Assembly (NCBI RefSeq): GCF_001194135.2
Contig: NC_068997.1
Span: 18,986,992-19,019,512 of the forward strand
Reading direction: 5' to 3'
DNA: 32,521 nt
From: Octopus bimaculoides
Taxonomy: Eukaryota
Shown piece by piece: positions 9,312-27,298 of the stretch. Position 1 is the first letter of the stretch. Every line of letters begins with the position of its first letter. Below the pieces are notes generated by a model that was not told where the DNA came from, did no database searches, and saw only the letters and a list, made by a program, of their open reading frames with translations. The translations under genes and the position numbers were made by a program.

Positions 9312-9416
9312 CTTCATATCAGTCAGCTTTTGCAACTCAAATGCATCCATTTCTTTCTCCAGCACTTTACTGCACCGGGTGGCCTCAACACTTGCTTTCG
9401 CATAGTCTGATTTGGC
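9312..9416 (-). CDS. CIBAR1: CIBAR1/FAM92 coding exon 7 (AKSDYAKASVEATRCSKVLEKEMDAFELQKLTDMK)
   Basis: 105 nt, ctctccttcacttgtag|GCC...AAG|gtaagc; aligns to [35 protein letters not shown] as recalled. Confidence 0.93.
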
Positions 9417-9715
9417 CTACAAGTGAAGGAGAGAAGACACATGTTAACCAACATCAGACAACATCAGTTTAGTGGCTTTATTCAAAGTGCACAGGTAACG
9501 GGTTAGTAAGGGCACATCTCAAACTCTTTAGATGTTTTTGTTACAGGTATTATTGTTTACACCCAGGTGAGTCCTAGGCAATCATAATTATGGCGAAAAG
9601 TAATCCAATGTTGTCCATCTTGTCTTTTTTTTTTTTCTCAGACACAATATCAAGGACTACATTATCCAATAAGTTCACCATAAGGTGATAGGGTGTGCTT
9701 TCAGGCAGATTAAGC

Positions 9716-9894
9716 TGCTGAAAAGTTCCTGGCTTTAAGGGTGTCATGAGAGGCCTAGTTGGAGGCCCAACCTCCTGAATTCTTTTACAGGGCTTAGAAA
9801 AACTGAAGGACCAGGGAATATGTTGAATAAAATAATTAACTGATCCTCCTGTATTTTCTTTTACCCAAAGCCAGGAACTTTACAGCACCCCCTC

Positions 9895-9895
<1 letters not shown>
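9716..9895 (+). mobile_element. mariner-derived deletion element
   Basis: TGCTGAAAAGTTCCTGGCTTT and its inverted copy at 9868-9888; right end abuts (TA)n; internal FYRA*KN..GEYVE*-like transposase C-terminus. Confidence 0.7.
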
Positions 9896-9934
<39 letters not shown>

Positions 9935-10904
9935 ATGCGTGTGTACATGTGAGTGTGTGTGTGTGTGCGTGTATGTATGTATGTTTACAACTCATACAAA
10001 CACACGAGGAGTATACATACATGTGTGTGTGTGTGTGTGTATGAATGTGTACACGCACACATACATGTATATATGTTAGAAACTGAAGATTCTATAAAAG
10101 TAAGTTTAAATTTCACATTTCTGATTGTTCAAAAGATTCAAAAGAACCATCAGAATAATGGAATAATCAGATGCATGAACTCTAGAGTTATGATTAAAAA
10201 AAAACTTCAGAGTCTAATATAAAAAAAAAAAAAAAACACACTGAGTACTTTTTTCTCTGTTTGTAAAGGTAAACATTCCTTAATTTAATCTTTATCCGTG
10301 TGTACCCTTCTGGATATGACCATATTCATGTGTGTTCATATGTATATACACATATAAGAAAATATATACATAAGTGGATAACTATGTGTGCATGTCTATT
10401 CTATACATATCTATTGGCTATGTGCAATGTATGCATGGTGTATGTATGTGCTGCATGTTACTAAATATTAGTATATTTCTTTTCTAGTCACATGAACACA
10501 GTAGCAGTAATACATAATAGTAACTATAGCAAAAGTGTAAAAGTTCAAAGCAGTTTATGTAGCATATGTGGTGAATGTTAGCAGAAACAAAAGTAGACAG
10601 TACACGGGTATGTAAGTTCATTAGTAAACCGGACATGACAGTAACGAAGGAAGAGTTTATCTCCAAGCAGTCAGTCAGCTTAATTAATTACGTGATAAAT
10701 TAATTACGTGATAAACCCATTTACCCTGTATCAAATATATAACACACACACAGATATATCTTTTATGTGCCCTTATAGTACCTGAAAACAAAAGGATGCA
10801 CATACACCAAAATTCCACAAAATTCCATGCTAATGCACGTTCTGAACACTAGCTTAATAACGACTAAATTATTTACCTAAATTCTTCATTATTTTTAAAA
10901 TTCA

Positions 10905-11163
10905 ACGCCGCATAAAAGGTGACTGTGCCAGCACCATGTTAAAAAGCACCCATGCCGGTGACACACAAACGGCACCCATGCCAGTGTCACATAAAAACAC
11001 CCATTACACTCTGTAAAGTGGTTGGCATTAGGAAGGGCATCCAGCCATAGACAACATGCCAAAACAGACAATTGGAACCTGGTTCAGTTCTCCAGCTCTG
11101 CCAGCTCTTGTCAAACCGTCGAAATGCATGCCAGCATAGCAAATGGACAATGATGACGATGAT
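10905..11163 (+). mobile_element. Interspersed repeat family C with (GAT)n tail
   Basis: GTGGTTGGCATTAGGAAGGGCATCCAGC...GGAC AATGATGACGATGAT; homologous to 12842, 24634, 26280, 27155 and 28900. Confidence 0.8.
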
Positions 11164-11374
11164 AAAACAAAGGCACTATATTTGAAAAGAAAAACGGTAA
11201 TGAAACTTAAAGTCACTCTCAGCACCATGGGCCACTTGTACAACTTTACTTCTGCCACTGAAATATTCAAACTGTAGAATCTTTACTCAATGTGCTTTTT
11301 CCCATTTTGTCTATGAATAAATGACAAGCAACCCAAGTAGAAGTAAGTTTGCCAGGACATTACTGACTGGGAGT

Positions 11375-11552
11375 CTGAGAATTCATAGGGCCATTTACCC
11401 AGTTTCCATGGCATATATATAAGTGACCGGGGTCACAACATTCACCCTGAACAGGAAACCGGGCCATCACACAGTTACATATTTAAGGTTAAATGGGGTG
11501 CAGCAACATGAAATGAAGTGTTTTTTCGCTCAAGAAAATAATGCACCACTAT
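11375..11552 (-). mobile_element. SINE fragment related to family D
   Basis: GCAACATGAAATGAAGTGTTTT..GCTCAAG resembles 28747-28775 and 32339-32365. Confidence 0.55.
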
Positions 11553-11890
11553 TTTTTTCCACCTTGTTTCATATTTATGTGCTTACTCTGGTATATATAT
11601 ATATATATATTAAGCATGTTTTAAGCAAGCAGAGACATAGGGGTTAGTTAATTTAGATTTTTACACAGAGTACTACTTTAAAATGCATGCATGCATGTGG
11701 GTGTGGGTGTGTGTGTGTGTGCACGTGCACAAATGGTTAGAGTACATTATATTAGTTAAAAGTTTGTTTTAAAAATCAAAGAAATATATATGATGCTTAT
11801 GAAGCATACACCAACAAGAAAAAGAAAGAAAAGAGAGCAAAGAAACACTTGAAAGAATTAATAGACAATGATACTTACTGTGATTATTTC

Positions 11891-11894
<4 letters not shown>

Positions 11895-11959
<65 letters not shown>

Positions 11960-11977
11960 CAACAACAACAACAACAA
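11895..11977. repeat. (TAA)n-(CAA)n microsatellite
   Basis: Direct reading. Confidence 0.95.
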
Positions 11978-12841
11978 CTGCTGAGCTGAAAGGGAAACAA
12001 ACCCTCAGAAGCTACGTCCACAAAAGAAAGTATTTACTAACCAATGCAATCCTACGTCACAATCATTTTTACAAAACAACAACAAACCACAGCCCAAAGA
12101 TGAAGTTAAAGCAATAAAAACAAAAAGCACCTCACTAATAAATAAAAAGAAATGGCAATTATTGTTATAATGAGATATAACATGTTATGACAGTATGTTA
12201 TGATATTAGTTATGTGTTAAGATTGATGTCAGTACAAGTGTTGTATCATATTATAGCAAAGCAGCATGTATTTATGACATGAGAGAGTATGATGAGATAT
12301 TTTGTGATAGGTTTTCATTATAATGAGCTTACCAGATATTGGAAGTATGATAACATTCTGGCTAGATGAGATATACAATGATATAGCATATATGACATTA
12401 AATGTTGTGAGATCCTATGATTATGACACGGATACAGAGAGACACAAGTATGTTGTGTCAGAGATAGATACAGTATGCACAATATTAATATGATGGAGAT
12501 GTTACAAATTAAGAGAACATTCTAGTGACATTACAAGAGTTATGAAATTGTGGTGAGATACCTCTAGTTATGACATCAATACAATGAGCAATGAGATGTA
12601 GTAATGTTATGATATTAGTATGATGAAATGCTACATGTTGTAGAGATATTGTATGAGTTATGAAATCACTGTAGCGATATAGTATAGTTGTTACATGAAT
12701 ACAAGTAGGATAAAGCAAGTTATGATACAAGGCAAAGATGTTATTTTTAAAATGAAGTTACAATGAATACTATCCTTCCAAGTTAAAAATCTAGAAAACT
12801 ATTTCTAACCTAGTTTATTAAACATTCTTGTTATCATTAAT

Positions 12842-13085
12842 CATTATCATCACCATCACCATTTAACATCGACTTTTCGTGCTGGCATAGGTAGAAAACG
12901 GTTTGACACAGAACTGGCAGCATGGCTGCATCAAGCTCCAATGTCATCTTTGGCATGGTTTCTATGGCTGGATACCCTTCCAAATGCCAACCACTTTACA
13001 ATGTGTACTGGGTGCTTTTTGTTTTTTGTTTTTTTTTCTTTTTTTCATGCCACCAGCACTAGTGAAGTTGCCATGTCATTTATTT
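12842..13085 (-). mobile_element. Repeat family C
   Basis: Reverse complement of the family C core (GGCTGGATACCCTTCCAAATGCCAACCAC). Confidence 0.75.
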
Positions 13086-13200
13086 GCAAGACAGAAAAAG
13101 AACAGAGGAGGAGAAGAAGGAAAGAGAGCAAAAAGTTCCCACTACGAAGAACAAGTATCTGGGAGAGACAGGCAGAGGTGAGTGGCTTTAATGAAAATTA

Positions 13201-13304
13201 TTTTTTACTTCTTTTAGTCATTTGACGGTGGCCATACTGGGGCACTGCCTTGAAGAATTTAAATCAAACAAATCAATTCCAGTGCTTTTGTTTTTCTTAA
13301 GCCT
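13201..13304 (-). mobile_element. SINE family A, 3' fragment next to gap
   Basis: TTTTAGTCATTTGACGGTGGCCATACTGGGGCACTGCC. Confidence 0.7.
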
Positions 13305-13687
13305 NNNNNNNNNNNNNNNNNNNNNNNNNNNNNNNNNNNNNNNNNNNNNNNNNNNNNNNNNNNNNNNNNNNNNNNNNNNNNNNNNNNNNNNNNNNNNNNN
13401 NNNNNNNNNNNNNNNNNNNNNNNNNNNNNNNNNNNNNNNNNNNNNNNNNNNNNNNNNNNNNNNNNNNNNNNNNNNNNNNNNNNNNNNNNNNNNNNNNNNN
13501 NNNNNNNNNNNNNNNNNNNNNNNNNNNNNNNNNNNNNNNNNNNNNNNNNNNNNNNNNNNNNNNNNNNNNNNNNNNNNNNNNNNNNNNNNNNNNNNNNNNN
13601 NNNNNNNNNNNNNNNNNNNNNNNNNNNNNNNNNNNNNNNNNNNNNNNNNNNNNNNNNNNNNNNNNNNNNNNNNNNNNNNNNNNNNNN
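13305..13687. other. Assembly gap
   Basis: Run of N. Confidence 1.
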
Positions 13688-13776
13688 GCTTCTTACCACA
13701 CAGCAGCATCATGTTAAAGTCAATAGCAAAGATTTTTAAAAAATCTTAAATCACATTCTTAAAAATCTGCCAAATA

Positions 13777-13817
<41 letters not shown>

Positions 13818-15045
13818 TGTGATGCTCTGCTTGAGAACCACTAATGTGTTATGTTGTCACTGTCAGAAGACAAACTGTGATACCAACATAAGGAAACGAG
13901 GAAAATTATATCAATGTTATATTAATACATTCATGTAATATCCTATTACATGGATAACCCGAGATACAAGAGAAATGAGATATCATGAGAACAATAAAAC
14001 ATTAGACCTTATGATATTATTAGGGACCTCAGAAAACACAGGTTATGCTATCAGTGCAAAGAGTTGGCTAGTAATGGAATATAACAGTGTAGTGAGATAT
14101 ACTATGAGAATATTCTGAAAATGTAATGAAGTATATTACAAATACTGTTACTATAGTGATACAATGTATAGACAGATATGTTATCAGTTAAGTGAAATAC
14201 TAAGTGATATATTATCACTATTTTATATTACTACATTAATCCCAATCAAGTCACTTGCTAGGAAAATGCAACTTCGGGATAGTTATTATATCAGCCAGCA
14301 TAGTAAGATAACATAAGGTAATTATGTTTATATAAGATGAGTTATATAAAGGTAGTGACAAAACATGAGCTATGATTCAGACAAATGAGATAATAAGAGC
14401 TGTGGTAGTAAAGTGAGATAGCATGAGTCACATCAAAGTAGTGATGTAACAGGAATTATATTAAACAGGATAACAGGCTAAAATAAATTAATAACTGTGT
14501 AGTTAAATGGTGGACCAGAGGCAAAGGAAATACTGTGGTTATATTGAAGTTGTAAAATTACATAAGTTATACCAGTAAGTTATACTAGTAAGTGATATAT
14601 GAGAGTAATGAAATAGGTCACTATATCAGGACTATGATGTTGGAGCCAGACTCAAAAGCAATTACTGGGTAACCGAATTGCATGTAATAAGAAAATGGGT
14701 ACTTTCCTATTATCAACAGTTATTATTTTTTTTTTATTTAGTAAAGGATTAGTAAATAAACAACTACTAGGTCATTACTCATTACTATGCTGCTGGTAAA
14801 AATATTTGTTAATCATGCACATGCTTTCATAAATTGTTCAAAGTGAAAGTCTTCTTTTGAAAATCTGTGTTGTGTTGTCTATATGTTGAAAGACACAGAA
14901 AAACACACACCCAAACAACCAAAATAACAGCTACATATTTATACGGGGTGTAATAGGTAAGTTGTTGCCATTTTATATTTTTAATTTTGTCTACTACACA
15001 GTATAGCAGGGTCAGTTGGACACCATCTGTGACAAAAACAGCACC

Positions 15046-15407
15046 ATGACGCAATTCACTCTGCCAGAAATTTGGAAACGACATGCTGTACTGCTTGGCG
15101 TTCACACAAGAAGCTCCAATACGAACATTTCAGAGTGTTTGGGTGTCAATCTGAGGACATGTAGCAAGAGTGATAATAATCAAACATCCAGTCAACAATA
15201 GTGATGGCAACGTTATGCCTCCATTCATCTCAACATGGAAGCCTACATCAAGTGCCTAAAGGAGGTAATGCTGCCCTGGGTCAAAACTGCAGCTGCTGGA
15301 AGAATCTATGTCTGGCAACAGGACTCTGCACCAGACCACACAAGCAGCAGAACCCAGTCATGGCTGTCAGACAATTTCTGCAACCACATCGCCCCTAACA
15401 ACTGGCC
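15046..15407 (+). pseudogene. Tc1/mariner transposase remnant (maT/DD37D-like), internally deleted
   Basis: MTQFTLPEIWKRHAVLLGV..SECLGVNLRT (N-terminal HTH-like) joined to LNMEAYIKCLKEVMLPWVKTAAAGRIYVWQQDSAPDHTSSRTQSWLSDNFCNHIAPNNWP. Confidence 0.85.
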
Positions 15408-15998
15408 ATATATATATACATATATATATACATATGGTCTTCTTTTGGAGTGCTGCATTGTGTTGACAGACTTGCACTTAAAATTCTCACGGTTTTAATC
15501 AATATCTGAAGAGCCAAGACAAATCCAGACATCATAACCACTCAACACTGAATGATCCCATGAAGTTTCATCTTTTTTTATGTCAGTATTTCTAAGTTTC
15601 ATACATAATGGCATTGTCACTGAAACATGGAATTAATGAATGTAGAATACAATTATGTATATCATAGTTACTGAAATATTAGGCATACCGTACGAGAAAT
15701 CAGTTAAAAATTATTTGGTATGGGTTACGGCACCTTTTTTTTTATATGCTTACTCCCCCTAACTATAGAACCTGGCTATGTTACTGCAAATAATTACACC
15801 TCCGAAATAGTTATAACATTAATCCGTGTAATGAGATGACAAAAGCCTTATTAGTTAGAGTAGTATGAGAACATATGTCAGGATAAGGTGAGAAACATAA
15901 ACTGTATGAGTGTAGTGAATTAATACAAGTGACACTATTGTAATGAGACAGAATGAATAACACATCCGTAATGAGATAATATGAGTTATAATAGTATA

Positions 15999-16555
15999 CA
16001 GGGTGACCCCCAAAAAACACAGAACCCATAAGAATTTTATTAAATCCTACAAAGGTCCAGCAAATTTCCTGAAATTTGCTGGACTTAAACTTCGGACTGT
16101 GTACCGTCATTCCCTTTGCATAAAAGTCATGTTCTTTTCAAAATATGCTCCAAATGGCATACATTGCGCAAACCCTTGCATACGTCGCACAAAATTGTCA
16201 ATTACTCGGACACGTTCCTCTTTAGGGATTTCCTTGATTTCTCCTGTGATTGCTGCCTTCAGTTCACCAATCATTTAAGGGCTGTCCTGGTAAGCATTAT
16301 CCTTGAGATACCCCAACACATAAAAATCGGTGGTGGGGTTCAAATGCGGTGAATGCAGTGCCTGCTTGCTCAATGTCATACTTCCTGCCGATCAATCCCT
16401 TCTGAAATTGCTCCCTCGGCCAGACTCAAGAGTCATTTTGATGCGTGGTGGGCGGCCCCGTCTTGCTGGAACCACTGTGCATCTCGATCTATCCTTATGG
16501 ATTGTTTATTCAAAGATTTGTGGGTTCTGTTTTTTTGGGGGGTGGGGTCACCCTG
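15999..16555 (-). mobile_element. Tc1/mariner deletion derivative with TIRs, TA target duplication and transposase C-terminus
   Basis: TA-CAGGGTGACCCC..CAAAAAA..AGAACCCA at both ends; minus-strand WFQQDGAAHH, HSPHLNPTTDFYVLGYLKDNAY, ELKAAITGEIKEIP. Confidence 0.92.
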
Positions 16556-16867
16556 TAATATGATGCTAATAGTTGCAGTATTAGTATAGCATGAAATAAT
16601 AAGTTATCGCATGGGTGAAGAAAAATATTTGAAGCACAAAGTTTTGGCAGAAAACAGAAGAAAACCATAAAGCAATTCCTCTTCTAAGAACTAGCGTGGA
16701 ATATATTATACATTAGTAACACACTTCTGACAGTTTGGAGCTATGTGAAACCCACCAAAGGAAAAAGAAACTAAAATATCATCAACAATAACAACAACAA
16801 AAAGTAGATTACGTACAGTGATCCAAGAGTTTACTGATTCAACTAAAACAAAAACAAAAATTATTAC

Positions 16868-16873
16868 CTGAGC
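16868..16873 (-). CDS. CIBAR1: CIBAR1/FAM92 6-nt microexon GCTCAG (Ala-Gln)
   Basis: tttcttaacgacttcccag|GCTCAG|gtaata; supplies the two residues (SQ in the human protein as recalled) absent between exon 5 (HQI) and the next exon (AKSD). Confidence 0.7.
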
Positions 16874-16883
16874 CTGGGAAGTC

Positions 16884-16892
16884 GTTAAGAAA
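16884..16892 (-). promoter_or_regulatory. U12-type branch point TTTCTTAAC
   Basis: 8/9 match to TTCCTTAAC at the U12-typical short distance from the 3' splice site. Confidence 0.7.
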
Positions 16893-17003
16893 ATATTTAA
16901 ATCCAGGAAAAAAATTTCAAATTTAGAATATAAACTATGATGGTAACGATGATGACAACAAAGCTAAAGGCGATGAGCATGGTAATGATGATGAGGATGA
17001 TGA

Positions 17004-17350
17004 TAGGTTGGTAGAATCGTTAGAGCATTAGACAAAATACCTAGTGTTATTTAGTTCAACCCCTTACATTCAAATCTTGAAGTCAACTTTACATTCTTTT
17101 TAGAGTCAATGAAATAACAACCAGTCAAGTACTCAAATTAAGATAATCAATTGTTCTCTACTCTCAAACCAAATTTCAAGTCTTGTGCCTATTTAAGACT
17201 ATGTTCTGAGTTCAAATTCCACCAAGATCGACTTTGCTTTCATCCTTTCAGGATCAATAAATTAGGTACCAGTGAAACACCAGGGTCGATGTAATCAACT
17301 AGCCCACCCCCTCAATATTTCAGGCCTTGTGCCTATAGTAGAAAGGATTA
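17004..17350 (+). mobile_element. Two tandem SINE family B copies
   Basis: GTAGAATCGTTAG head; GTTCAAATTCCACCAAGATCGACTTTGCTTTCATCCTTTCAGG. Confidence 0.8.
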
Positions 17351-17548
17351 TTATTATTATTATTATTTACTTTTAATCTGCATGTTTGTTAAACCACTTG
17401 CTGAGACATACCCAGCATCCTATGTGGAAAGAAGTAGCAATGTAAAAAAACGAAAAGGATAAGAGATGTAACAGTATGACTGAAAGCTTGGGGAGGGGAA
17501 GTGGCAGGGGAAGTAGCAAAATATCTTCATGTAATACAACACAGACAT

Positions 17549-18090
17549 TTAAACTGATAGGGTTTTTCTGAGGATGTTGTCAGTACTTGTCAGCACAATC
17601 TTTTGGATTTCTCTGAGACATAGTTCTCCTGCGATATTATCGAGATGTTTCTGACATCCCTGTCTTATCATACCTAGGATACCCACAATAATAGGAACAG
17701 TTCTTGCTTTAAGATGCCACATCTTTTGTATTTCAATTTCCAGTTCCTTATATTTACTTAATTTGTCAAATTCCTTTACAGATATACTTTTATCAGTGAG
17801 AACACTTACATCTATTAGTCTACAAGTATTTTCTTCTCTGCCTTTAATGACTGTGCCTGGTCAATTAGCCTTGATTGTTCTGCTGGTGTTGACTGGAAAA
17901 TCCCAGAGGATAGTGACATTTTTACCTTCAACGACTGGCTCAGGATGATATTCACACCAATAAGCAGGAAAATACTGTCCTACCTTATCGTGGCGATTTT
18001 TGTATTCGTTTGGTGTCAGCACAGGACATCTCAAGATGAGACGGTCTATTGTTTCATCAAATTTATCTCAGAATCTGCATTTAGAGTCAG
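17549..18090 (-). pseudogene. R4/Dong-type non-LTR retrotransposon C-terminus (CCHC knuckle and restriction-like endonuclease)
   Basis: CRF*DKFDETIDRLILRCPVLTPNEYKNRHDKVGQY...ILWDFPVNTSRTIKAN*PGTVIK..CRLIDVSV..KEFDKLSKYKELEIEIQKMWHLKARTVPIIVGILG...ILRKTLSV*. Confidence 0.88.
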
Positions 18091-18124
18091 AACCATTTTG
18101 AAGAATGTTAGCCTTGTAGTTTTC

Positions 18125-18352
18125 GGTAAGTTGAACAATATGTTTAGCAGGCATTTCCTCTAACTCTGTACATTCTGAGTTCAAACGCCACAGAGGCCAA
18201 CTCTGAGTCAACCTCTGTGGCATTTGAACCTTTTTGGGTCAGCTTTGTCCTTTTGGGGTTGATAAAATAAGAACCACTTAAGCACTGGAGTAGATGTAAT
18301 CTACTTCACCTTCCCCGAAAATTGCTTATCTTGTGCCAAAATTAGAAAGAAT
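18125..18352 (+). mobile_element. SINE family B, diverged
   Basis: CATTCTGAGTTCAAAC..GGGGTTGATAAAATAAG..GCTTATCTTGTGCCAAAATTAGAAAG. Confidence 0.7.
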
Positions 18353-18604
18353 TATTAACAACATCACATCATAAAAGATTACGTCCTTCAATTTATTTTG
18401 TGCCAGATTTCTGGCAATAATGTTAGTTAATTGCCAACTGTGCCCTCTTTTAACTGCAACAATACCCATACCCATAATATAAAAATATAACATTCATATT
18501 TTTCTAATACATGCCACAATATAAAGATGTTGCAAGTGAGAGGTGTCAGTTGTCTCAAGCGACCAACAAAACAGATAATGCATAAAATATTTCAATTGCA
18601 AAGT

Positions 18605-18680
18605 TGTGATGGCTTAACAGAAGCAGTTCTGTTGCAAACTGTGATGGCTTAACAGAAGCAGTTCTGTTGTAAACTATGAT
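18605..18680. repeat. 35-bp tandem repeat, about 2.2 copies
   Basis: TGTGATGGCTTAACAGAAGCAGTTCTGTTGCAAAC repeated. Confidence 0.9.
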
Positions 18681-19019
18681 GTGGTGAGGTGAGGAGATAT
18701 CAAACAGGTACGAGAAACTGTAACACAGGGTGAGAAATGTAAGTCTAACTGAAGTTACAAACTGTGAGTGACTGAGGTCGTGTCAGTTGTATGTGACAAG
18801 AGTTATACAGAGTTAAAAACGGTTACAGGCAATGAACTGGCAAAGCTGTTAAAATAGAGGGTAGATTACTTGGCAAGATTTGGTCCACATTTCTTGGTTT
18901 CGGGTTCAAATCCTGCCAAGGTCAACGTTGTTTGAATCCCTTCAGGAGTTGATAGAAAAAGTATCAGTACAGTAATGGCATCAATTCTTTTGTTTCTCTC
19001 TCTCTCATTTTCTTTCTCT

Positions 19020-19087
<68 letters not shown>

Positions 19088-19149
19088 CTTTTCTGTCTCT
19101 TTGCTTCTCTCATCCCCCCCCCCTCTCACTCTCTCAAAGAAACACACTG

Positions 19150-19280
19150 ACCTCAGACTTGGAAAAAGATGGGCTCTGCCAGGTTTAAATGCCCAACACA
19201 TGCCATATGTCAGTCACGAGACTACCCCAACAAGTCTCTTAGGAGCTAAGGGCCCATGGAAAGAAGCAAACTGTAAGTGA
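19150..19280 (+). pseudogene. Short RTE-like LINE remnant
   Basis: Broken frames give RWA..H..HMSVTRLPQQV, resembling RWAGHVxRMxDxRLPKQV. Confidence 0.4.
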
Positions 19281-19563
19281 CTGTGATGATATCAAGCAGA
19301 TATCATACAAGCTTTAACTACACAAACTGTGAAGGGTTGTGATGATATGAAATAGATATCACCTAAGCAATGTTATCATAAACTGTGCCGTTGTTTGGTA
19401 GAGTAATATCAAGCAGGCATGGCAAACTGTAACAAATTATGGTGATAGAAGGGAAAATAAGACATTTTGAGAAAACAAAGACATTTCAACTCCAACCATA
19501 ACGGTAATAGTAAAATGTACAAAGGAACTAAATATTTATAATGATGTATATCTTAATTTCCAG

Positions 19564-19599
<36 letters not shown>

Positions 19600-19631
19600 T
19601 ATATACATACACACACAAATATATATATATA

Positions 19632-19758
19632 CAGGGTGTTCACAAAGTGTGGGTACATGGGGATTAACACATACTTTAAGAAATTATTATTTCTCATATT
19701 TAATTGTTTATGTTATAAATACATTTACTCCATGTACCCAGACTTTGTGGACACCCTG
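19632..19758. mobile_element. Tc1/mariner-type MITE, 127 bp
   Basis: 29-bp TIRs CAGGGTGTTCACAAAGTGTGGGTACATGG, 27/29 complementary; inserted in TA-rich sequence. Confidence 0.9.
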
Positions 19759-20071
19759 TCTATATATATAAGTATATGTATACATATATACATACACAAT
19801 GAGAGAATGTCTGTTTATATGTTAAAGGGAAAGAGATGGCGTGTATGTAAATGGTGAATGTAAGAGGAGAGAAAAGGCAAAATCTATAGAATAGTATAAA
19901 ATTACAATCAGAAGAATGTATTTTCACTAATTACCAAAATATAAAAATAACAAATAACAAATAAATGAAACAAAACAAAAATGCACACACACAAAAAAGA
20001 AATTATTTCACAAGAAAATATTAATCAGAAAAATTTACATACATATATATGTAAATATATATATTTATATG

Positions 20072-20108
<37 letters not shown>

Positions 20109-20110
<2 letters not shown>

Positions 20111-20358
20111 CGGAGATATAATTGCATAGCAAGTGACCTGATCTGAGATCGTGTGCTGGAACAAAAACAATTGCAGCGTGGAAGGTGTTTATAACCCATT
20201 TAAGAAACACACAAAATCTGTTAGATTCACTTCAACATTTAAATTTAACTTTGCCAAAATATTTTCGTCGCTTTGAGACTGCAACCTGTTCACTGACAAA
20301 ATTCTGTGCATGTTTCTTAAATGGCTTATAAACACCTTCCACACTACAATTGTTATAT
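20109..20358. mobile_element. Small element in a (TA)n tract with long inverted repeats around a hammerhead; Penelope-like LTR derivative (inferred)
   Basis: Arms 20167-20209 and 20311-20353 are inverted with 3 mismatches in 43 nt; (TA)n on the left and TA repeats on both sides of the adjacent gap. Confidence 0.5.
20250..20300 (-). ncRNA. Minimal type I hammerhead ribozyme motif with G3:C8 core swap
   Basis: UUUGUCA GUGAACA G GUUGC AGUCUCAAA GCGAC GAAA AUAU UU UGGCAAA: stem I 7 bp (one G-U), stem II 5 bp (one G-U), GAAA, palindromic AUAU loop III, UH site. Confidence 0.65.
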
Positions 20359-20359
20359 A

Positions 20360-20504
20360 NNNNNNNNNNNNNNNNNNNNNNNNNNNNNNNNNNNNNNNNN
20401 NNNNNNNNNNNNNNNNNNNNNNNNNNNNNNNNNNNNNNNNNNNNNNNNNNNNNNNNNNNNNNNNNNNNNNNNNNNNNNNNNNNNNNNNNNNNNNNNNNNN
20501 NNNN
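20360..20504. other. Assembly gap
   Basis: Run of N. Confidence 1.
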
Positions 20505-20776
20505 TATATATATATATATATATATATATATTGAAGAAAATATACAAGAAATTCACTTATTGCAAAAAGAAAAAAAAGAAAATTAACAACGCTTTTATAC
20601 AATAATGCTATGTTTCAAAATAACCAGCGTGCTGAGAGAAAGTGCTGTATGCTTGTCAATATCAAAAATGCCATGCTTTGGACAAATTTTATGCAGAGCA
20701 AGCGTATAGTGGTCAAACAGACATGCTTTTCATTATAATCAATGCTATTACTATTATTATTATTATTATCATTATT

Positions 20777-21097
20777 AAGGCAGTGAGGTGGCAGATACAT
20801 TAACATGCCTGACAAAAAATTCTTAGCAGCATTTCATCCATCTCTATGTTCTGAGGTTCAAATTTAACTTTGCTTTTCATCTTTTTGGGGTCAATAAAAT
20901 AAGAACCAGTCGAGTACTGTGAGTGGACTAGTCGATTACATCAACCCCAGTGTTTCACTGGTACTTAATTCATCAACCCCAAAAGGACGAAAGGCAAAGT
21001 CGACCTCGGCAGAATTCGAACTCAGAACATAGCAACAGGCAAAATACTGCTAAGCATTTCGTCCGGTGCACTAACAATTCTGCCAGCTCACCGCCTT
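20777..21097. mobile_element. Two SINE family B copies tail-to-tail (plus then minus)
   Basis: GGCAGTGAGGTGGCAGA head at 20779; TTCTGCCAGCTCACCGCC (reverse head) at 21078-21095. Confidence 0.8.
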
Positions 21098-21098
21098 C

Positions 21099-21141
<43 letters not shown>

Positions 21142-21414
21142 TAACAATAATGATGATCATGATAATGATGATGATTTAGGCACAAGGCCAGCAATTTGAG
21201 GGCGGCAGGGTCAGTTAATACCATTGACTTCCGTACATAAGTGATATTTCATTTTATCAGCCCTGGGGGTGATGAAGGGCTAACTCAATCTCACAAGGAT
21301 TAACTTTGTCTTCCATCCCTCAGCGGTTAATAAAATAAAGTAGTAGTCAATTACAGGAGAAGGGATTGATTAATTAGTTTCCTGATTGATTAATTGATTA
21401 ATCAATTTCTTCCT

Positions 21415-21449
<35 letters not shown>

Positions 21450-21769
21450 GGCCTTCTACCGAAATTCGAAACGACAGCAACAATGTCGAAAACAATAGTT
21501 ACATAACACAAACTTTGAACGTGGAAAGAAGTAGCAACGTAAAAAAACGAAAAGAAAAAAAATTCATAATTGCAAATACATTTCAGTCAGCCGTGCATTT
21601 ATACTTTTCAACAAAGAATCCCACAACACCTTTTTAATTTCAAATTTTCAAATTCCTCCCACACTACAGGGCCTCCGTAGTCACCCCGGATAAAAAAAAA
21701 AAAAGGGGTTTCATGCAACAATCAGAATCTGAGATGCAGCCCGAGATACAGATAGACTCTCGCAGGCTT

Positions 21770-21835
21770 TGTAGCTGCTACTGCTACTGCTGCCTCTACT
21801 ATTACTACTACTATCACCACCACCACCACAACTAT

Positions 21836-21887
<52 letters not shown>

Positions 21888-21932
21888 GCTATTACTACTA
21901 CTACTGCTACTACTACTAATAATAATACTACT
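21770..21932. repeat. Compound (TAC/TAT/CAC)n microsatellite
   Basis: Direct reading. Confidence 0.95.
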
Positions 21933-22619
21933 ATGGCTTGAGCCAACAAGGGAACCTCTATTATGCAGTCACTTGACCGGCAAGAAATAGCAGCGAAATC
22001 AACTTCAAATCTTGAAAGACAAAAAAATTTTTTTTTTTTTTTTTTAAATTTTTGAAGACACTGGGAAATGTAGTGTTGGATACCACTGTGCCTGAATGAT
22101 CAGAAGTGATCATAAGAGATGGTCACATTTGGAGTTACTTCAGATCGTACGATTGCGCAATTAGAAATGACCTAGGATTAAACAAACACCAACCACAAAC
22201 TACTATTATTAGTACTACTACTACTACTACTAATACTACTACTACCAAAAGACTATTACTACTAAAATAAGATCATGTCTTTGGGTAGCACACATGCTTG
22301 ATTTCCTGACAGGAACATCAGGTGAATAATCTCATTTCACTGTGTTTTTAAGTTTTGTAAAACACAAAACACAAAAAAAAAAAACAGAAAAACAAACCCT
22401 ACGCCCACAGTAAGACGAAGGACTGTTGCAAGTGAGAGGTGTCAAACGTCTGGACGATGACCAACTAATAATGCTGAGCCAACGAAGCAACCTTGGTGCA
22501 GTCACTTGACCGGGTAGAAATAGCAAGCGAGTCTCCCTCGAAAAAATGAAAGGCACTGCACAATGTGGTCCTGGATACAACTGGTCGGAATAATCAGAAG
22601 GGATGGTTATGACTGGACT

Positions 22620-22705
22620 NNNNNNNNNNNNNNNNNNNNNNNNNNNNNNNNNNNNNNNNNNNNNNNNNNNNNNNNNNNNNNNNNNNNNNNNNNNNNNNNN
22701 NNNNN
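22620..22705. other. Assembly gap
   Basis: Run of N. Confidence 1.
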
Positions 22706-22759
22706 TAAACAACAACAGCAACTACAGGTGGTGCTGCAACTATTTCTACTACTACTACT

Positions 22760-22791
<32 letters not shown>

Positions 22792-22822
22792 CAATAACAA
22801 CAACAACTACTACTACTACTAC

Positions 22823-22854
<32 letters not shown>

Positions 22855-22905
22855 ATGGTGGTGGTGGTGGTAGTGGTAGTAGTGGTAGTGGTAGTGGTAG
22901 TGGTA
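22706..22905. repeat. Compound (CAA/TAC/CAC/TAG/GGT)n microsatellite
   Basis: Direct reading. Confidence 0.95.
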
Positions 22906-23117
22906 GAGCCAACAAACAAACCTCTAAGCAGTCGCTCAACTGGCAAGAAGTAGCAGCCAAAAATGTAGTGCTGGACACCATGGTGTTAGAAAGATTGGAA
23001 GGGATTAGAAGGGATGGCCACAGTTGGAATTACTTCAAATCATAGGTCTGCTCAAATCATAAGTGACTCAGGGGTTTTAAATAAACAGCAACCAGAATCA
23101 ACAACTACTACTACTAC

Positions 23118-23159
<42 letters not shown>

Positions 23160-23565
23160 TATTATTATTATTATAAGAGTTAATAATAATAATAATAAAA
23201 ACAATTGCATGTTTAAACAAGTTAAACAAACGATCAACTAATTAGTTAGATATTTAATCAACTGACTAACAATAATAAAGTGGAATTGAACCTGTGTGTG
23301 TGTTATTATTGGTGCAATGACTCTCCCAAGACACAACAAAATAATAATAATAATAATAATAACAATAATAATAATAATAGAATAAAGATATCCCCACCCA
23401 CCCCCAATTCATGCCTCATGCAGGAAATGACAAATAATTAAATAAAAATAATAAACAAATAATTGAATTAAAAAATTGAATAGTTAAAATAAAAATGATA
23501 AATTAGAAAATATGAAATAATCAAATATAAAAAAAAAAGATGAATATAATTTATATCATTGCCTT

Positions 23566-23574
23566 AGAGGATAC
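23566..23574 (-). promoter_or_regulatory. U12-type 5' splice site GTATCCTCT
   Basis: Directly follows exon 5; 8/9 match to GTATCCTTT. Confidence 0.8.
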
Positions 23575-23676
23575 AATCTGATGTTGATTGGTGGGACTTC
23601 GAAGGAGTAATTTGTTCATCTCTTGTCTTTTCTTTCCTTCACGCTCTTGAGCTGTGAATGAAGTCTTTAATTCATT
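23575..23676 (-). CDS. CIBAR1: CIBAR1/FAM92 coding exon 5 (NELKTSFTAQEREGKKRQEMNKLLLRSPTNQHQI)
   Basis: 102 nt, ctcttaattgcag|AAT...ATT|gtatcctct; aligns to DDLKATLTARNREAKQ...NPSDRHVI as recalled. Confidence 0.92.
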
Positions 23677-24172
23677 CTGCAATTAAGAGAGGATAAAAGG
23701 TAATAAAAGACATCTTAGAATAATTTTGCTTGTCATTGCGTTACTTTGCCCATCAGTAACACTTTCACGTGATTAGAGAAAAAGAGAGAGAAAGAAAAGA
23801 GGGGGAGAGAAAAAGAGGGAGAGAAAAAGAGGGAGAGAGAAGCGTCCGACGTGATGTAAGAGGGAAGGTAATTGTGAAGCTTTCACATGATTAGTTGAAG
23901 GGAAAGAGAGGAGAAAGGAAAAGGAGGAAGAAAAAGAGGATAAGGCAAAGTGTGAGACAGAAAGAGGGGGAGTGAAGCACCCATGACATGAAGTAAGGAG
24001 AATGTAATATTCATCACATGGTTAAAAAAGGTAGTTATGGTATAGAGGAGGAGAGTTAAAAAATTCTTATAGTAAGAGAAAAGAACACAACAATAATATA
24101 TGACCGAAATTTTATTGTTCCTTATCAATTTTGTTCAGTATTTTCATTAAAGTTCATTAAATAGTTCTTATA

Positions 24173-24580: not shown

Positions 24581-24633
24581 TCGAAAAGTGGTAACGATAC
24601 AAAAGGACAAAGAAATTATTTTATTAATTCATT

Positions 24634-24815
24634 ATCATCATCATCACCATTGTTTAACGTCGGCCTTCCATGCTTCCAGCATGGAGTGGACAGTTTGACA
24701 GGAGCTGACCAGACTTCTGTGTCTGTTTTGGCATGGTTCCTACAGCTGGATGCCCTTCCTAACACCAACCACCCAGCAGAGTGAACGGAATGCTTTCCAC
24801 ATGTCACAAGCACAG
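24634..24815 (-). mobile_element. Repeat family C
   Basis: CAGCTGGATGCCCTTCCTAACACCAACCAC with (ATC)n tail. Confidence 0.8.
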
Positions 24816-25926
24816 GTGAGCATAATTTTACTTTCAAAAGAGAAATTCAGTTTTATACGAAGGAGGTCAATAAGTTATCGACATTGCCATAAAGAGATCA
24901 ATGACATAAATTATCTGCTGACCCCTGCATTAAGTGGACACTTAAGTTGATGAAAATGAGTAAAAGGATACACAAATTAGATGAGAAGCCAATCAATCAG
25001 GCAATTGATGATTAACAATTGCTTTGCATTAATGAAATTAAAGAAGAGATATGGAAAGATGAAAATGTGACCAGCCAATTAATGCATTATATTTAATGAA
25101 TATGTTAACAAAAATACATAAACACATGTAAGTGAGATGAGACAGAACCAAGCCAATGAAGCTATTTAATTAATGAGGGTTTGACATGAACAAAAATTAA
25201 CAGACAGATATACATCAGAGATAAGAAAGAGACTGGCCAGTTAAAGTGTTACATTTAATGAATGCTTACATTAACGAATATGAGTGGATAAATACAGGTA
25301 AGATGAGAAAGAGGCCAGACGATCAAGCTATTAAATTAATGACTGGTAGATATTAATTGCTTGCACATTCATTTTTGTTAGTATATTTAATGAACAGTTA
25401 CATTAACAAACATGAATAGTCACACAGTCCAATTTTTATTGCAGTGTGGGGGTTTGTACCACCTGACTAGCACCTGCACCGGTGGCATGTAAAAGGCACC
25501 GTTTGAGTATGGTTGATGCCACTTCCACTTTCTCAAGTCATGTCAACTCATAAGGGCCAGATTCTAGGTTTCATGGCGTTTAAATTCCCCACCTGGACGC
25601 CCATTCTATCTTTTTTTGTGGCACCAGCACAGGTGTGGCCACTAAATACTTACAAGACAAGAGCCCTCAACTAAGTAAGGGTATAGAATTAAGGGATGAG
25701 AAAGATAGTGGGACAGGAGCAGGTGTGTGTAGCTGAAGAGAGAGAGAGAGAGAGACATAGACAGACGAACGGACAGCCAGACAGACAGGGATGTGAGGTC
25801 AAGGTACAAAGTAGAAAAAGTGAACAGGTTCGTTAGTTCGCTAAAGTGAGAATAGCATGACAGATGATTAGAGAAAGGGAATGAGTTGGGTGCAGAGATG
25901 CTTATTGGAGTTAGGGAACAGCTTAC

Positions 25927-25995: not shown

Positions 25996-26279
25996 CTGAA
26001 ATCAACAATTTGTAAATGGAAATCACTTTTTTAAAGCTGGGTGAGTTACATTGTTAGTTGTTTTGTAATTGTCATAAATATTAGAGAGTTTAGTTAACAG
26101 AATGTTACACTTATGGCTGAAGACGCTTTTATGGCTCGGCGAAGTGAGAAGAGGAAGTGAAATGGAAATATGTCAATCAAAATGATATGATCACATGATT
26201 AATCAAGTGATTAAATGATTCATTTTTGTTGGATGAAGGATCACAAGCTTTGAGGAACTATGAGCAGCTACAAAGTGAG

Positions 26280-26575
26280 TGCTGGTGGCAAGTAAAAAGC
26301 ACCCACAACACTCTCGGAGTGGTTGGCATTAGGAAGGGCATCCAGCTGTAGAAACTCTGCCAGATCAGATTGGAGTGTAGAGTAGCCATCTGGTTCACCA
26401 GTCCCCAGTCAAATCGTCCAACCCATGCTAGCATGGGTGCTTTTACGTGTCATCGGCATGAGGGCCAGTCACACGGTACTGGCAACGGCCACACTCAAAA
26501 AGGTGTCTTTTATGTACCACCTGCATGGGAGCCAGTCCAGCGGCACTGGCAACGACCTCGCTAGAATGATCTTCT
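26280..26575 (+). mobile_element. Repeat family C (composite)
   Basis: CTCTCGGAGTGGTTGGCATTAGGAAGGGCATCCAGCTGTAGAAAC. Confidence 0.8.
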
Positions 26576-26643
26576 AACGTGCCAAATTTGAATAAATAAG
26601 CATTGCATTTAAGACAGGAATCCAAATGTTAAAGGGTTAAATC

Positions 26644-26855
26644 NNNNNNNNNNNNNNNNNNNNNNNNNNNNNNNNNNNNNNNNNNNNNNNNNNNNNNNNN
26701 NNNNNNNNNNNNNNNNNNNNNNNNNNNNNNNNNNNNNNNNNNNNNNNNNNNNNNNNNNNNNNNNNNNNNNNNNNNNNNNNNNNNNNNNNNNNNNNNNNNN
26801 NNNNNNNNNNNNNNNNNNNNNNNNNNNNNNNNNNNNNNNNNNNNNNNNNNNNNNN
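26644..26855. other. Assembly gap, probably hiding CIBAR1 exon 3
   Basis: Run of N between exons 2 and 4. Confidence 1.
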
Positions 26856-27111: not shown

Positions 27112-27154
27112 GGATGAAAAGCAAAGTCAACCTCGGCGGAATTTGAACTCAGGA

Positions 27155-27298
27155 AGGCATTAGGAAGGGCATCCAGCTGTAGAAACTCTGCCAGATCAGA
27201 TTGGAGCCTAGTGCAGCCATCTGGTTCGCCAGTCCTCAGTCAAATCGTCCAACCCATGCTAGCATGGAAAGCAGACGTTAAACGATGATGATGATGAT
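27155..27298 (+). mobile_element. Repeat family C, 3' part with (GAT)n tail
   Basis: GGCATTAGGAAGGGCATCCAGC...GACGTTAAACGATGATGATGAT. Confidence 0.85.

What the first reader, a model, noticed from the sequence alone, without database searches (positions are those of the whole stretch)
16874..23574. Long, transposon-filled U12-type intron in a ciliary gene
Seen: GTATCCTCT donor and TTTCTTAAC branch site 12-13 nt from CAG, both one mismatch from consensus. All other introns here have U2-type donors. Known: minor introns are rare, slowly spliced and present in several cilia genes. Inferred: CIBAR1 output may be limited by minor-spliceosome activity.
Basis: partly seen in the sequence, partly recalled or inferred. 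Interest (0 to 1): 0.7.

Follow-up and report, generated by a model that had tools for sequence, protein, structure and literature searches.

The report
Conserved minor intron in octopus CIBAR1
The octopus cilia gene CIBAR1 carries a rare minor-spliceosome (U12-type) intron at exactly the place where human and mouse CIBAR1 have their catalogued one, so it is real but ordinary; the less expected point is that it ends at a 6-base exon shared by vertebrates, molluscs and a ribbon worm.

Summary
Confirmed. The window is Octopus bimaculoides, and CIBAR1/FAM92A lies on the minus strand. Exon 5 ends CAGATT|GTATCCTCT at 23574. TTTCTTAAC puts a branch A 12 nt before CAG| at 16874.

This is the only donor in the gene that scores as U12-type: +13.7 bits, against -8 or lower for the other eight. 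It sits after the same Ile codon, in phase 0, as the human and mouse FAM92A minor intron listed in MIDB (ATT|GTATCCTTT).

The exon after the acceptor is a 6-nt microexon, GCTCAG (Ala-Gln), followed at once by a U2-type donor, GTAATA, and a second 7.45 kb intron. O. sinensis RefSeq isoforms X3 (…HQI-AQ-AKSDY…) and X1 use this acceptor. X2 bypasses it through a GC donor 12 nt downstream.

The same U12 intron, 6-nt exon and U2 intron occur in O. vulgaris, Haliotis, Lottia, a nemertean, a grouper and a bat. The longest exact octopus-to-octopus match in 14.2 kb of intron (103 nt) surrounds the microexon.

Both assembly gaps are intronic and flanked by sequence collinear with O. vulgaris. "Transposon-filled" is only partly shown, since about a third is measurably repetitive. 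Rate limitation by the minor spliceosome is untested in octopus.

The parts
23575..23676 (-). CIBAR1 coding exon 5 (102 nt, phase 0 to 0), encoding NELKTSFTAQEREGKKRQEMNKLLLRSPTNQHQI
   Evidence: tblastn with the O. sinensis protein; sequence read; acceptor ttaattgcag|AAT.
23566..23574 (-). U12-type 5' splice site ATT|GTATCCTCT
   Evidence: U12 PWM 13.7 bits; -2.4 bits on a U2 matrix recalled from memory. Identical in O. vulgaris. Same codon and phase as human and mouse ATT|GTATCCTTT.
16874..23574 (-). U12-type (GT-AG) intron, 6,701 nt as assembled, containing two N gaps
16883..16894 (-). U12 branch-site 12-mer ATTTTCTTAACG (core TTTCTTAAC at 16884-16892); predicted branch A at 16885, 12 nt from the exon
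   Evidence: 9.1 bits; one of only 7 sites above 8 bits in 14.2 kb. No polypyrimidine tract between it and the AG.
16874..16876 (-). 3' splice site CAG of the U12 intron
   Evidence: This acceptor is required by O. sinensis isoforms X3 and X1.
16868..16873 (-). 6-nt microexon GCTCAG (Ala-Gln), phase 0
   Evidence: O. sinensis XP_029647065.1 reads ...NQHQI-AQ-AKSDY.... 100% identical in O. vulgaris. The same architecture is present in 6 further genomes outside Octopus.
16862..16867 (-). Proximal U2-type donor CAG|GTAATA that closes the microexon
   Evidence: U12 -16 bits; U2 +6.2 bits.
16811..16867 (-). Alternative extension of the microexon to a 57-nt exon (adds VIIFVFVLVESVNSWIT, 16817-16867), with a distal donor ACT|GTACGT (16811-16816)
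   Evidence: The translation matches O. sinensis isoform X1 (P0184) exactly.
16805..16907 (-). 103-nt block identical between O. bimaculoides and O. vulgaris. It spans the branch site, acceptor, microexon and both donors.
   Evidence: Longest exact run in 12.7 kb of chained intronic alignment that is 86.3% identical overall.
9417..16867 (-). U2-type intron (7,451 nt as assembled, including gap 13305-13687) between the microexon and exon 7
   Evidence: It carries a mariner-like ORF remnant at about 15200-16270 (family recalled from memory, Pfam negative).
9312..9416 (-). CIBAR1 exon 7, encoding AKSDYAKASVEATRCSKVLEKEMDAFELQKLTDMK; acceptor ctctccttcacttgtag|GCC
23557..23574 (-). 12 nt, GTATCCTCTAAG (Val-Ser-Ser-Lys), read as exon in bypass isoforms, followed by a GC donor AAG|GCAATG (23557-23562)
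   Evidence: O. sinensis X2 and the O. vulgaris model read ...HQI-VSSK-AKSDY.... The sequence is identical in the window.
20360..20504 (.). Assembly gap (145 N) inside the U12 intron, bordered by (TA)n
   Evidence: Flanks 20505-20921 and 19761-20108 align collinearly to O. vulgaris L001 24139-24565 and 25088-25457.
22620..22705 (.). Assembly gap (86 N) inside the U12 intron, among trinucleotide repeats
   Evidence: Flanks 22877-23574 and 22401-22619 align collinearly to L001 20072-20794 and 20914-21127.
17199..18223 (.). Repeat-derived DNA in the intron: a multi-copy ~170-nt element (17199-17367) and a degenerate ORF remnant (17549-18223, minus strand)
   Evidence: 27 blastn copies within window plus L001. 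The ORF has unnamed multi-copy homologues at E=1e-34 and no Pfam match.
20727..21228 (.). Second multi-copy dispersed element in the intron
   Evidence: Up to 33 blastn copies within window plus L001.

Best explanation
Window 16874-23574 (minus strand) is a GT-AG U12-type intron of Octopus bimaculoides CIBAR1/FAM92A. It is orthologous to the catalogued human and mouse FAM92A minor intron.

Inferred mechanism, from the established minor-spliceosome pathway:
- The U11/U12 di-snRNP recognises ATT|GUAUCCUCU and UUUCUUAAC together.
- The A at 16885 is the branch point.
- The CAG 12 nt downstream is the 3' splice site.

The exon it joins to is a 6-nt microexon (GCUCAG, Ala-Gln). A U2-type donor (GUAAUA) closes this exon at once, so one spliceosome defines its 3' splice site and the other its 5' splice site. 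A second, major-type intron of 7.45 kb then leads to exon 7.

The locus also offers alternatives that are annotated in the sister species:
- a distal donor that makes a 57-nt exon;
- a GC-AG bypass from 12 nt inside the U12 intron straight to exon 7.

Shown here: the sequence signals, their conservation, orthology of position, and use of the acceptor in annotated orthologue isoforms. Inferred: dependence on the minor spliceosome in octopus, and any kinetic limit on CIBAR1 output.
For: 1. Signals. The donor scores 13.7 bits on the U12 matrix, against -8 or lower for all other donors of the gene. The branch site scores 9.1 bits with its A at -12, and there is no polypyrimidine tract.
2. Orthology. 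The MIDB supplement lists Fam92a/FAM92A with 5' splice site ATT|GTATCCTTT in mouse and human. The window has ATT|GTATCCTCT after the aligned Ile codon, in phase 0.
3. Conservation of the donor. GTATCCTT(N) sits at this boundary in Haliotis, Lottia, Tubulanus, Paralvinella, Epinephelus and Myotis.
4. Acceptor use. O. sinensis X3 reads HQI-AQ-AKSDY, and X1 reads AQ plus 17 residues that translate exactly from window 16873..16817.
5. Architecture. A strong U12 branch site with its A at -12 to -14, then AG, a 6-nt exon and GT, was found in 6 further genomes outside Octopus. The exon encodes TQ, RQ, TK, SQ and SQ. The Myotis branch site equals the one MIDB gives for human.
6. Conservation island. 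A 103-nt exact match between O. bimaculoides and O. vulgaris surrounds the microexon, the longest in 14.2 kb of intron that is 86% identical.
7. Minor introns have been surveyed in O. sinensis and are relatively enriched in molluscs (PMC10639083).
8. Loss of U11 in mouse mis-splices Fam92a around this intron.
Against: - No octopus RNA was examined here. Support for the splice junctions rests on RefSeq isoform models of a sister species and on one RNA-seq-assembled ORF of unknown species (P0185, ...QI-SE-AKSEL...).
- The donor motif alone occurs by chance about 0.7 times per strand in a window this size.
- The best U12-like branch-site score in the whole 14.2 kb lies just upstream of exon 7 (CTCTCCTTCACT, 10.5 bits, A at -8). 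Direct U12 splicing to exon 7 is therefore not excluded as a minor route.
- The crayfish orthologue has a U2-type GTAAGT donor at the same position. This intron can therefore be converted, and function does not strictly need the minor spliceosome.
- intronIC itself was not run. My PWM is a stand-in built from 152 mammalian sites.
Confidence: 0.9

Rival explanations
1. One long U12-type intron runs from 23574 straight to exon 7 (acceptor at 9417, 14.2 kb). The CAG at 16874 and the 6 nt after it are not used, or are used only rarely.
For: The top-scoring U12 branch-site 12-mer in the 14.2 kb (CTCTCCTTCACT, 10.5 bits) lies just before exon 7. Skipping the microexon keeps the reading frame. Some annotated orthologues lack the two residues, including Tubulanus, Myotis, Huso and some Branchiostoma models.
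Against: - The branch A would sit only 8 nt from the exon. From my memory of published work, that is shorter than the usual 10-15 nt spacing.
- That 12-mer lies within an ordinary polypyrimidine tract, with a TTAAC about 28 nt upstream, so the site looks like a typical U2 acceptor.
- None of the three O. sinensis isoform models or the O. vulgaris model retrieved reads HQI-AKSDY.
- In Tubulanus and Myotis, whose models lack the residues, the genome still holds an intact branch site, AG, 6 nt and GT. The omissions therefore look like annotation misses.
- A 103-nt conservation island surrounds the microexon.
Confidence: 0.05
2. The intron is removed by the major (U2-type) spliceosome despite its U12-like motifs. 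This could be directly, or through the annotated GC-AG bypass (donor AAG|GCAATG at 23562) that skips the microexon.
For: The termini are GT-AG. O. sinensis X2 and the independent O. vulgaris model both read HQI-VSSK-AKSDY, which needs the GC donor. The crayfish orthologue is U2-type.
Against: - ATT|GTATCC scores -2.4 bits and AAG|GCAATG only +0.8 bits on a U2 donor matrix recalled from memory. The gene's other donors score 3.7 to 11.8 bits.
- The GTATCCTT donor is retained in phyla whose introns are otherwise unalignable.
- The mammalian orthologue behaves as a minor intron when U11 is lost.
- The bypass isoform may exist alongside the U12 route rather than replace it.
Confidence: 0.04
3. The motifs are a chance match in AT-rich, repeat-rich intronic DNA.
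For: About 0.7 donor-grade and about 4.6 branch-site-grade matches are expected by chance in sequence of this size and composition. A second donor-grade motif exists at 24971.
Against: The donor lies on the exact exon boundary. The full acceptor architecture is expected 0.06 times by chance. The same arrangement recurs in seven other genomes, and annotated isoforms use it.
Confidence: 0.01

Closest known systems
Human and mouse FAM92A/CIBAR1 minor intron (MIDB; Olthof et al. 2019, PMC6717393: chr8:93705011-93708010, 3000 nt; mouse chr4:12165772-12168222)
   Same: - Same gene, same codon (Ile, ATT) and same phase 0.
- Same GT-AG U12 subtype, with donor GTATCCT(T/C)T.
- By inference from the bat locus, which has an identical branch site TTTTCCTTTATG and a 3,082-nt intron, it also ends at a 6-nt microexon followed by a U2 donor.
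   Different: - The octopus intron is two to three times longer (6.7 kb; 10.8 kb in O. vulgaris).
- Its branch site is closer to consensus (9.1 against 5.9 bits).
- The microexon encodes Ala-Gln instead of Ser-Gln.
- Octopus-specific alternative donors are annotated (57-nt exon; GC bypass).
Nested or competing U12/U2 introns ('twintrons'; reviewed in Akinyi & Frilander 2021, PMC8329584)
   Same: A major-type GC-AG intron annotated in the sister species (23562 to 9417) would enclose the U12 intron, the microexon and the U2 intron. Its donor lies 12 nt from the U12 donor.
   Different: The two routes share no splice site. Use of the bypass rests on gene models only, and no regulation has been shown.
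Microexons (3-27 nt), as described mainly for neural, SRRM4-dependent exons
   Same: An in-frame exon of 6 nt, deeply conserved, inserting two residues into a folded domain. From memory of the human protein, this is the turn before BAR helix 3.
   Different: - Its 3' splice site belongs to a U12-type intron rather than a U2-type one.
- No evidence for tissue-specific inclusion was obtained.
- No paper in the library pairs 'microexon' with CIBAR1.

Membership tests
U12-type (minor) intron, GT-AG subtype | 5' splice site matching |RTATCCTTT, extended and rigid, unlike U2 GTRAGT | tested here: met
   ATT|GTATCCTCT scores 13.7 bits on a PWM of 152 mammalian minor 5' splice sites (training median 13.9). 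It scores -2.4 bits on a U2 matrix recalled from memory.
U12-type (minor) intron, GT-AG subtype | Branch-site motif TCCTTAAC-like near the 3' end | tested here: met
   ATTTTCTTAACG scores 9.1 bits, one of 7 sites above 8 bits in 14.2 kb. The same TTCTTAAC core occurs in catalogued SACM1L and ATG9A minor introns.
U12-type (minor) intron, GT-AG subtype | Short, constrained distance from branch A to 3' splice site (about 10-15 nt) and no long polypyrimidine tract | tested here: met
   The A at 16885 is at position -12. The intervening sequence is CGACTTCCCAG. Orthologues have the A at -12 to -14. The distance rule itself is recalled from the literature and was not re-derived.
U12-type (minor) intron, GT-AG subtype | Positional orthology with an accepted minor intron | tested here: met
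   Same Ile codon and phase as MIDB Fam92a/FAM92A. The U12 donor is conserved in 8 of 9 other loci examined: O. vulgaris, Haliotis, Lottia, Tubulanus, Paralvinella, Epinephelus, Myotis, and Branchiostoma via the VSF read-through of its model. The crayfish donor is U2-type.
U12-type (minor) intron, GT-AG subtype | Classified as U12 by a trained classifier (intronIC or MIDB scoring) | not tested
   intronIC and its matrices were not available. My PWM is a stand-in.
U12-type (minor) intron, GT-AG subtype | Excision depends on U11/U12/U4atac/U6atac, and the organism has a minor spliceosome | not testable with these tools
   Literature only. Minor introns were surveyed in O. sinensis and molluscs are relatively enriched (PMC10639083). 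Dependence on U11 is shown for mouse Fam92a.
CIBAR1/FAM92A (CBY1-interacting BAR-domain protein) | FAM92 BAR domain (PF06730) and orthology to named CIBAR1/FAM92A proteins | tested here: met
   The window exons are 94% identical to O. sinensis 'protein FAM92A' (E=1.8e-93). Homologues carry PF06730. UniRef A0A0L8G445_OCTBM equals window exons 1-2 plus read-through.
Microexon | An exon of 27 nt or less, with functional splice sites on both sides, included in mRNA | tested here: met
   - 6 nt between CAG| and |GTAATA.
- Encoded in RefSeq XP_029647065.1 (AQ) and in Haliotis XP_067651562.1 (TQ), where the 6 nt are separate from both neighbouring exons.
- In the grouper XP_033492461.2, SQ is likewise separate.
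- Inclusion in O. bimaculoides RNA itself was not examined.

The most novel reading that the evidence does not exclude
The exon downstream of the CIBAR1 minor intron is a 6-nt microexon that has persisted since the bilaterian ancestor. It was seen in cephalopods, two gastropods, a nemertean, a teleost and a bat, and its two residues appear in amphioxus protein models. It has fused to the next exon in an annelid and a crayfish.

Its 3' splice site is read by the minor spliceosome and its 5' splice site, 6 nt away, by the major one. Its inclusion would therefore depend on direct cooperation between the two machineries over a distance too short for ordinary exon definition.

Octopus, and apparently amphioxus, add alternative donors and a major-spliceosome bypass. 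The locus could therefore act as a switch that reports minor-spliceosome activity by adding or omitting two residues before BAR helix 3 of a ciliary transition-zone protein.

I found no paper that describes this arrangement.
Probability: 0.5. Interest if true: 0.55.

Novelty: new member of a known kind. Interest (0 to 1): 0.33.

Why it matters
The octopus intron adds little as a U12 intron. It is the orthologue of a catalogued vertebrate minor intron in a lineage already known to keep many minor introns. Its value is as a clean, well-supported example.

- **Conserved signals in changing DNA.** The intron has grown to 7-11 kb of repeat-rich sequence while its signals stayed fixed.
- **Annotation lesson.** Several public gene models at this locus do one of three things. 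Some read through the GTATCC donor (VSF or VSSK). Some drop the two microexon residues. The Lottia model borrows them from the next acceptor.
- **The microexon.** A U12 intron, a 6-nt exon and a U2 intron appear to be conserved across Bilateria in a gene needed for ciliogenesis and limb patterning. If that holds, it is a compact natural substrate for studying how the two spliceosomes cooperate across a very short exon. It could also help explain why Fam92a is mis-spliced when the minor spliceosome fails.

Tried and rejected
- **Doubt about the acceptor.** The CAG at 16874 is followed by only GCTCAG and then GTAATA, and tblastn placed the next coding exon at 9416. I rejected this doubt after finding the O. 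sinensis isoforms and the same layout in other genomes.
- **First protein search.** A word-indexed search with concatenated window exons found nothing. The exhaustive HMMER search and a later search with P0152 both worked.
- **Genomic look-ups.** Look-ups for O. sinensis X2 and X3 and for Branchiostoma X2 returned nothing, because only the longest product of each gene is on record.
- **TE family.** Pfam on ten intronic ORF fragments gave no transposon domain. The repeat finder mostly returned microsatellites.
- **Literature.** Searches for FAM92A1 with U12 and for microexon with CIBAR1 gave nothing relevant. The intronIC paper's held supplement does not list the gene.
- **Scripting error.** My first donor-score table was off by one base. 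It is superseded.

Full report
**What is in the window.** The window has 36.7% G+C, is rich in microsatellites and holds five N runs. A CIBAR1/FAM92A gene lies on the minus strand.
- Exons were first placed with a human sequence I recalled from memory, used only as a lead. They were then placed with real orthologues.
- UniRef A0A0L8G445_OCTBM equals window exons 1-2 plus read-through of the next intron. The window is therefore Octopus bimaculoides.
- The O. sinensis 'protein FAM92A' isoforms are 94-99% identical, and homologues carry PF06730.
- Coding exons, given high to low on the minus strand: 31552-31521, 27656-27541, exon 3 (absent, see below), 25995-25927, 23676-23575, 16873-16868, 9416-9312, 8857-8744, 7240-7097, and 6294 to the stop codon.

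**The observation.**
- Exon 5 ends ...CAT CAG ATT, followed by GTATCCTCT (23574-23566).
- TTTCTTAAC lies at 16892-16884, and CAG at 16876-16874. The branch A at 16885 is 12 nt from the exon.
- I took 152 human and mouse minor-intron 5' splice sites and branch sites from the MIDB supplement, left out FAM92A and built PWMs.
- The donor scores 13.7 bits (training median 13.9). The branch site scores 9.1 bits; human FAM92A's own scores 5.9.
- All eight other visible donors of the gene score -8 bits or lower on the U12 matrix and 3.7 to 11.8 bits on a U2 matrix recalled from memory. The exon 5 donor scores -2.4 on that U2 matrix.
- The donor motif alone is not rare. About 0.7 are expected per strand, and one more sits at 24971.
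- The complete acceptor layout (branch site, AG at 10-15 nt, 6 nt, GT) is expected only 0.06 times in 14.2 kb.

**The difficulty, and how it resolved.** After the CAG at 16874 there are only six bases, GCTCAG, before GTAATA. The next recognisable coding exon (AKSDY...) starts at 9416.
- The best U12-like branch-site score in the whole interval lies just before that exon (CTCTCCTTCACT, 10.5 bits), but its A is at -8.
- Two readings were therefore possible: a 6.7 kb U12 intron ending at a 6-nt microexon, or a single 14.2 kb intron.
- The O. sinensis RefSeq isoforms settle it.

| Isoform | Length | Sequence at the junction | What it uses |
|---|---|---|---|
| X3 (XP_029647065.1) | 326 aa | ...NQHQI-AQ-AKSDY... 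| U12 acceptor; 6-nt microexon |
| X1 | 343 aa | AQ + VIIFVFVLVESVNSWIT | Same acceptor; exact translation of window 16873-16817, ending at a distal donor ACT\|GTACGT |
| X2, and the O. vulgaris model | 328 aa (X2) | HQI-VSSK-AKSDY | The 12 nt GTATCCTCTAAG read as exon, then a GC donor AAG\|GCAATG, skipping the microexon |

**Conservation between octopuses.** I fetched the O. vulgaris locus (L001, gap-free).
- The two introns align collinearly at 86.3% identity overall.
- The longest exact run in 12.7 kb of alignment is 103 nt at window 16907-16805. It covers the branch site, acceptor, microexon and both donors.
- The donor and about 44 nt after it are also identical.
- The O. vulgaris U12 intron is 10,772 nt, and the following U2 intron is 12,483 nt.

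**Conservation across phyla.** MIDB lists Fam92a/FAM92A as a minor-intron gene in both mouse and human. The 5' splice site is ATT|GTATCCTTT and the branch site TTTTCCTTTATG. That is the same Ile codon and phase as in the window. I fetched genomic loci for seven more orthologues and read the boundary in each.

| Species | Donor | Branch site (position of A) | Acceptor, exon, next donor |
|---|---|---|---|
| Haliotis asinina | ATT\|GTATCCTTG | TCTTCCTTGACA (-12) | CAG\|ACACAG\|GTAAAT (TQ, as in its RefSeq protein) |
| Lottia gigantea | ATT\|GTATCCTTC | TATTCTTTAACA (-13) | TAG\|AGACAG\|GTAATA |
| Tubulanus (nemertean) | ATT\|GTATCCTTT | ACATCCTTGACA (-14) | CAG\|ACCAAG\|GTAAAT |
| Epinephelus (grouper) | ATT\|GTATCCTTG | GTTTCCTTGACC (-13) | CAG\|TCCCAG\|GTATGT (SQ) |
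| Myotis (bat) | ATT\|GTATCCTTT | TTTTCCTTTATG (-14) | CAG\|TCACAG\|GTGGGT (SQ) |
| Paralvinella (annelid) | CTG\|GTATCCTTT | TTGACCTTGACC (-16) | Two codons fused to the next exon |
| Procambarus (crayfish) | ATT\|GTAAGT (U2-type) | none | Two codons fused to the next exon |

- The Myotis branch site equals the one MIDB gives for human. Its donor-to-microexon distance is 3,082 nt, against 3,000 nt for the human intron. I infer that the catalogued mammalian intron also ends at the microexon.
- Amphioxus isoforms show the same four variants as octopus: SQ, none, SQ plus an extension, and VSF read-through.
- An RNA-seq-assembled ORF 66% identical to the octopus protein reads QI-SE-AKSEL.

**Gaps.** Both N runs inside the finding (20360-20504 and 22620-22705) are intronic and bordered by simple repeats. 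On each side the sequence aligns to the gap-free O. vulgaris locus in the same order and orientation.
- The O. vulgaris interval between the aligned flanks is 522 nt, against 396 nt in the window, 145 of them N.
- For the second gap it is 119 nt, against 257 nt, 86 of them N.
- Nothing suggests a misjoin, and reading frame is not an issue.

**'Transposon-filled'.** The comparison set was only 117 kb (the window plus L001). Within it, the 6.7 kb intron is 3.4% N, 13.7% tandem repeats and at least 19% dispersed multi-copy DNA. The main dispersed elements are at 17199-17367 and 20727-21228.
- A degenerate ORF at 17549-18223 has multi-copy unnamed homologues at E=1e-34 and no Pfam domain.
- At least a third of the intron is repeat. 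The true share, and the families involved, need a repeat library.

**Mechanism and limits.** The mechanism is inferred from the established minor-spliceosome pathway.
- U11/U12 binds the donor and branch site as a unit, and the AG 12 nt from the branch A is the 3' splice site.
- The C-to-T change in the branch site would turn one U12 pair from G-C to G-U. This rests on my memory of the U12 snRNA sequence.
- The U2-type donor 6 nt downstream probably helps define the acceptor. Cooperation of this kind between the two spliceosomes is reviewed in PMC8329584.
- Minor introns have been surveyed in O. sinensis and are relatively enriched in molluscs (PMC10639083).
- In U11-null mouse limb, both exons flanking the Fam92a minor intron are skipped. 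This supports the idea that CIBAR1 expression is sensitive to the minor spliceosome. The idea has not been tested in octopus, and intron retention was not measured here.

**Verdict.** The observation and its main interpretation stand. The intron is a new orthologous member of a known, catalogued minor intron, so the finding is ordinary. The ancient 6-nt microexon between a U12 and a U2 intron is a secondary point that I could not find described.

Noticed in passing
window 26278-27156 (gap 26644-26855): CIBAR1 coding exon 3 (45 aa, GDEISQLIVKYVDKETLNPSSKKCLTTFAENLSTIQDYRQAE in O. sinensis) is absent from the window. In O. vulgaris it lies in a 5.1 kb interval. The window has only about 880 nt there, including 212 N, so the gap is much larger than written and hides an exon. 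This probably explains why the UniRef O. bimaculoides model is a 67-aa fragment.
   Followed up: partly
window 9422-9433 (minus strand): The highest-scoring U12-like branch-site 12-mer of the whole 14.2 kb (CTCTCCTTCACT, 10.5 bits, A at -8) sits just before exon 7, whose upstream intron has a U2-type donor. It is identical in O. vulgaris. It may be only a pyrimidine tract, or it may allow occasional direct U12 splicing that skips the microexon.
   Followed up: partly
L003 (Lottia) 3298-3327 and 3520-3525; L004 (Tubulanus) 4999-5029: Public gene models look wrong at the microexon.
- The Lottia JGI protein has 'SQ' read from the acceptor region of the next exon (no AG precedes it). The genome has an intact U12 acceptor plus AGACAG (RQ) plus GTAATA.
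- The Tubulanus RefSeq protein lacks the two residues, although an intact ACCAAG (TK) microexon is present.
- The Paralvinella and Branchiostoma X2 models translate the U12 donor as 'VSF'.
   Followed up: partly
window 24960-24971 (minus strand) and 393-404 (plus strand): Two further donor-grade U12 motifs, neither at a known exon boundary: TGT|GTATCCTTT at 24971 inside CIBAR1 intron 4 (14.2 bits), and TAA|GTATCCTTT at 396 on the plus strand (14.3 bits). Their number fits chance expectation. The flank of the first was not found by exact match in O. vulgaris.
   Followed up: partly
window 15200-16280: ORF fragments on both strands resemble a mariner/Tc1 transposase, e.g. ...VWQQDSAPDHTSSRTQSWL... 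and ...IDNFVRRMQGFAQCMPFGAYFEKN. They lie in the U2-type intron after the microexon. The family is my recollection, and Pfam gave no match to the short fragments.
   Followed up: partly
window, many places (e.g. 8156-8400, 20950-21102, 26930-27163, 30127-30357; also 10895-11270, 12903-13062, 24616-24837, 26258-26434): Two short interspersed repeat families recur on both strands throughout the window. Their chance ORFs show them up: ...YRPQKDERQS...NLNSEH... and ...WMPFLMPTT(L/P)Q.... They look SINE-like and make up a good part of the CIBAR1 introns.
   Followed up: no
L001 (O. vulgaris) 22897-24139, 27405-29034 and 37277-40604, compared with the window: Most of the length difference between the two octopus introns comes from kilobase-scale insertions or deletions. 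These include a tandem array of about 165-nt units at L001 39771-40606, matching window 10928-11094.
   Followed up: no
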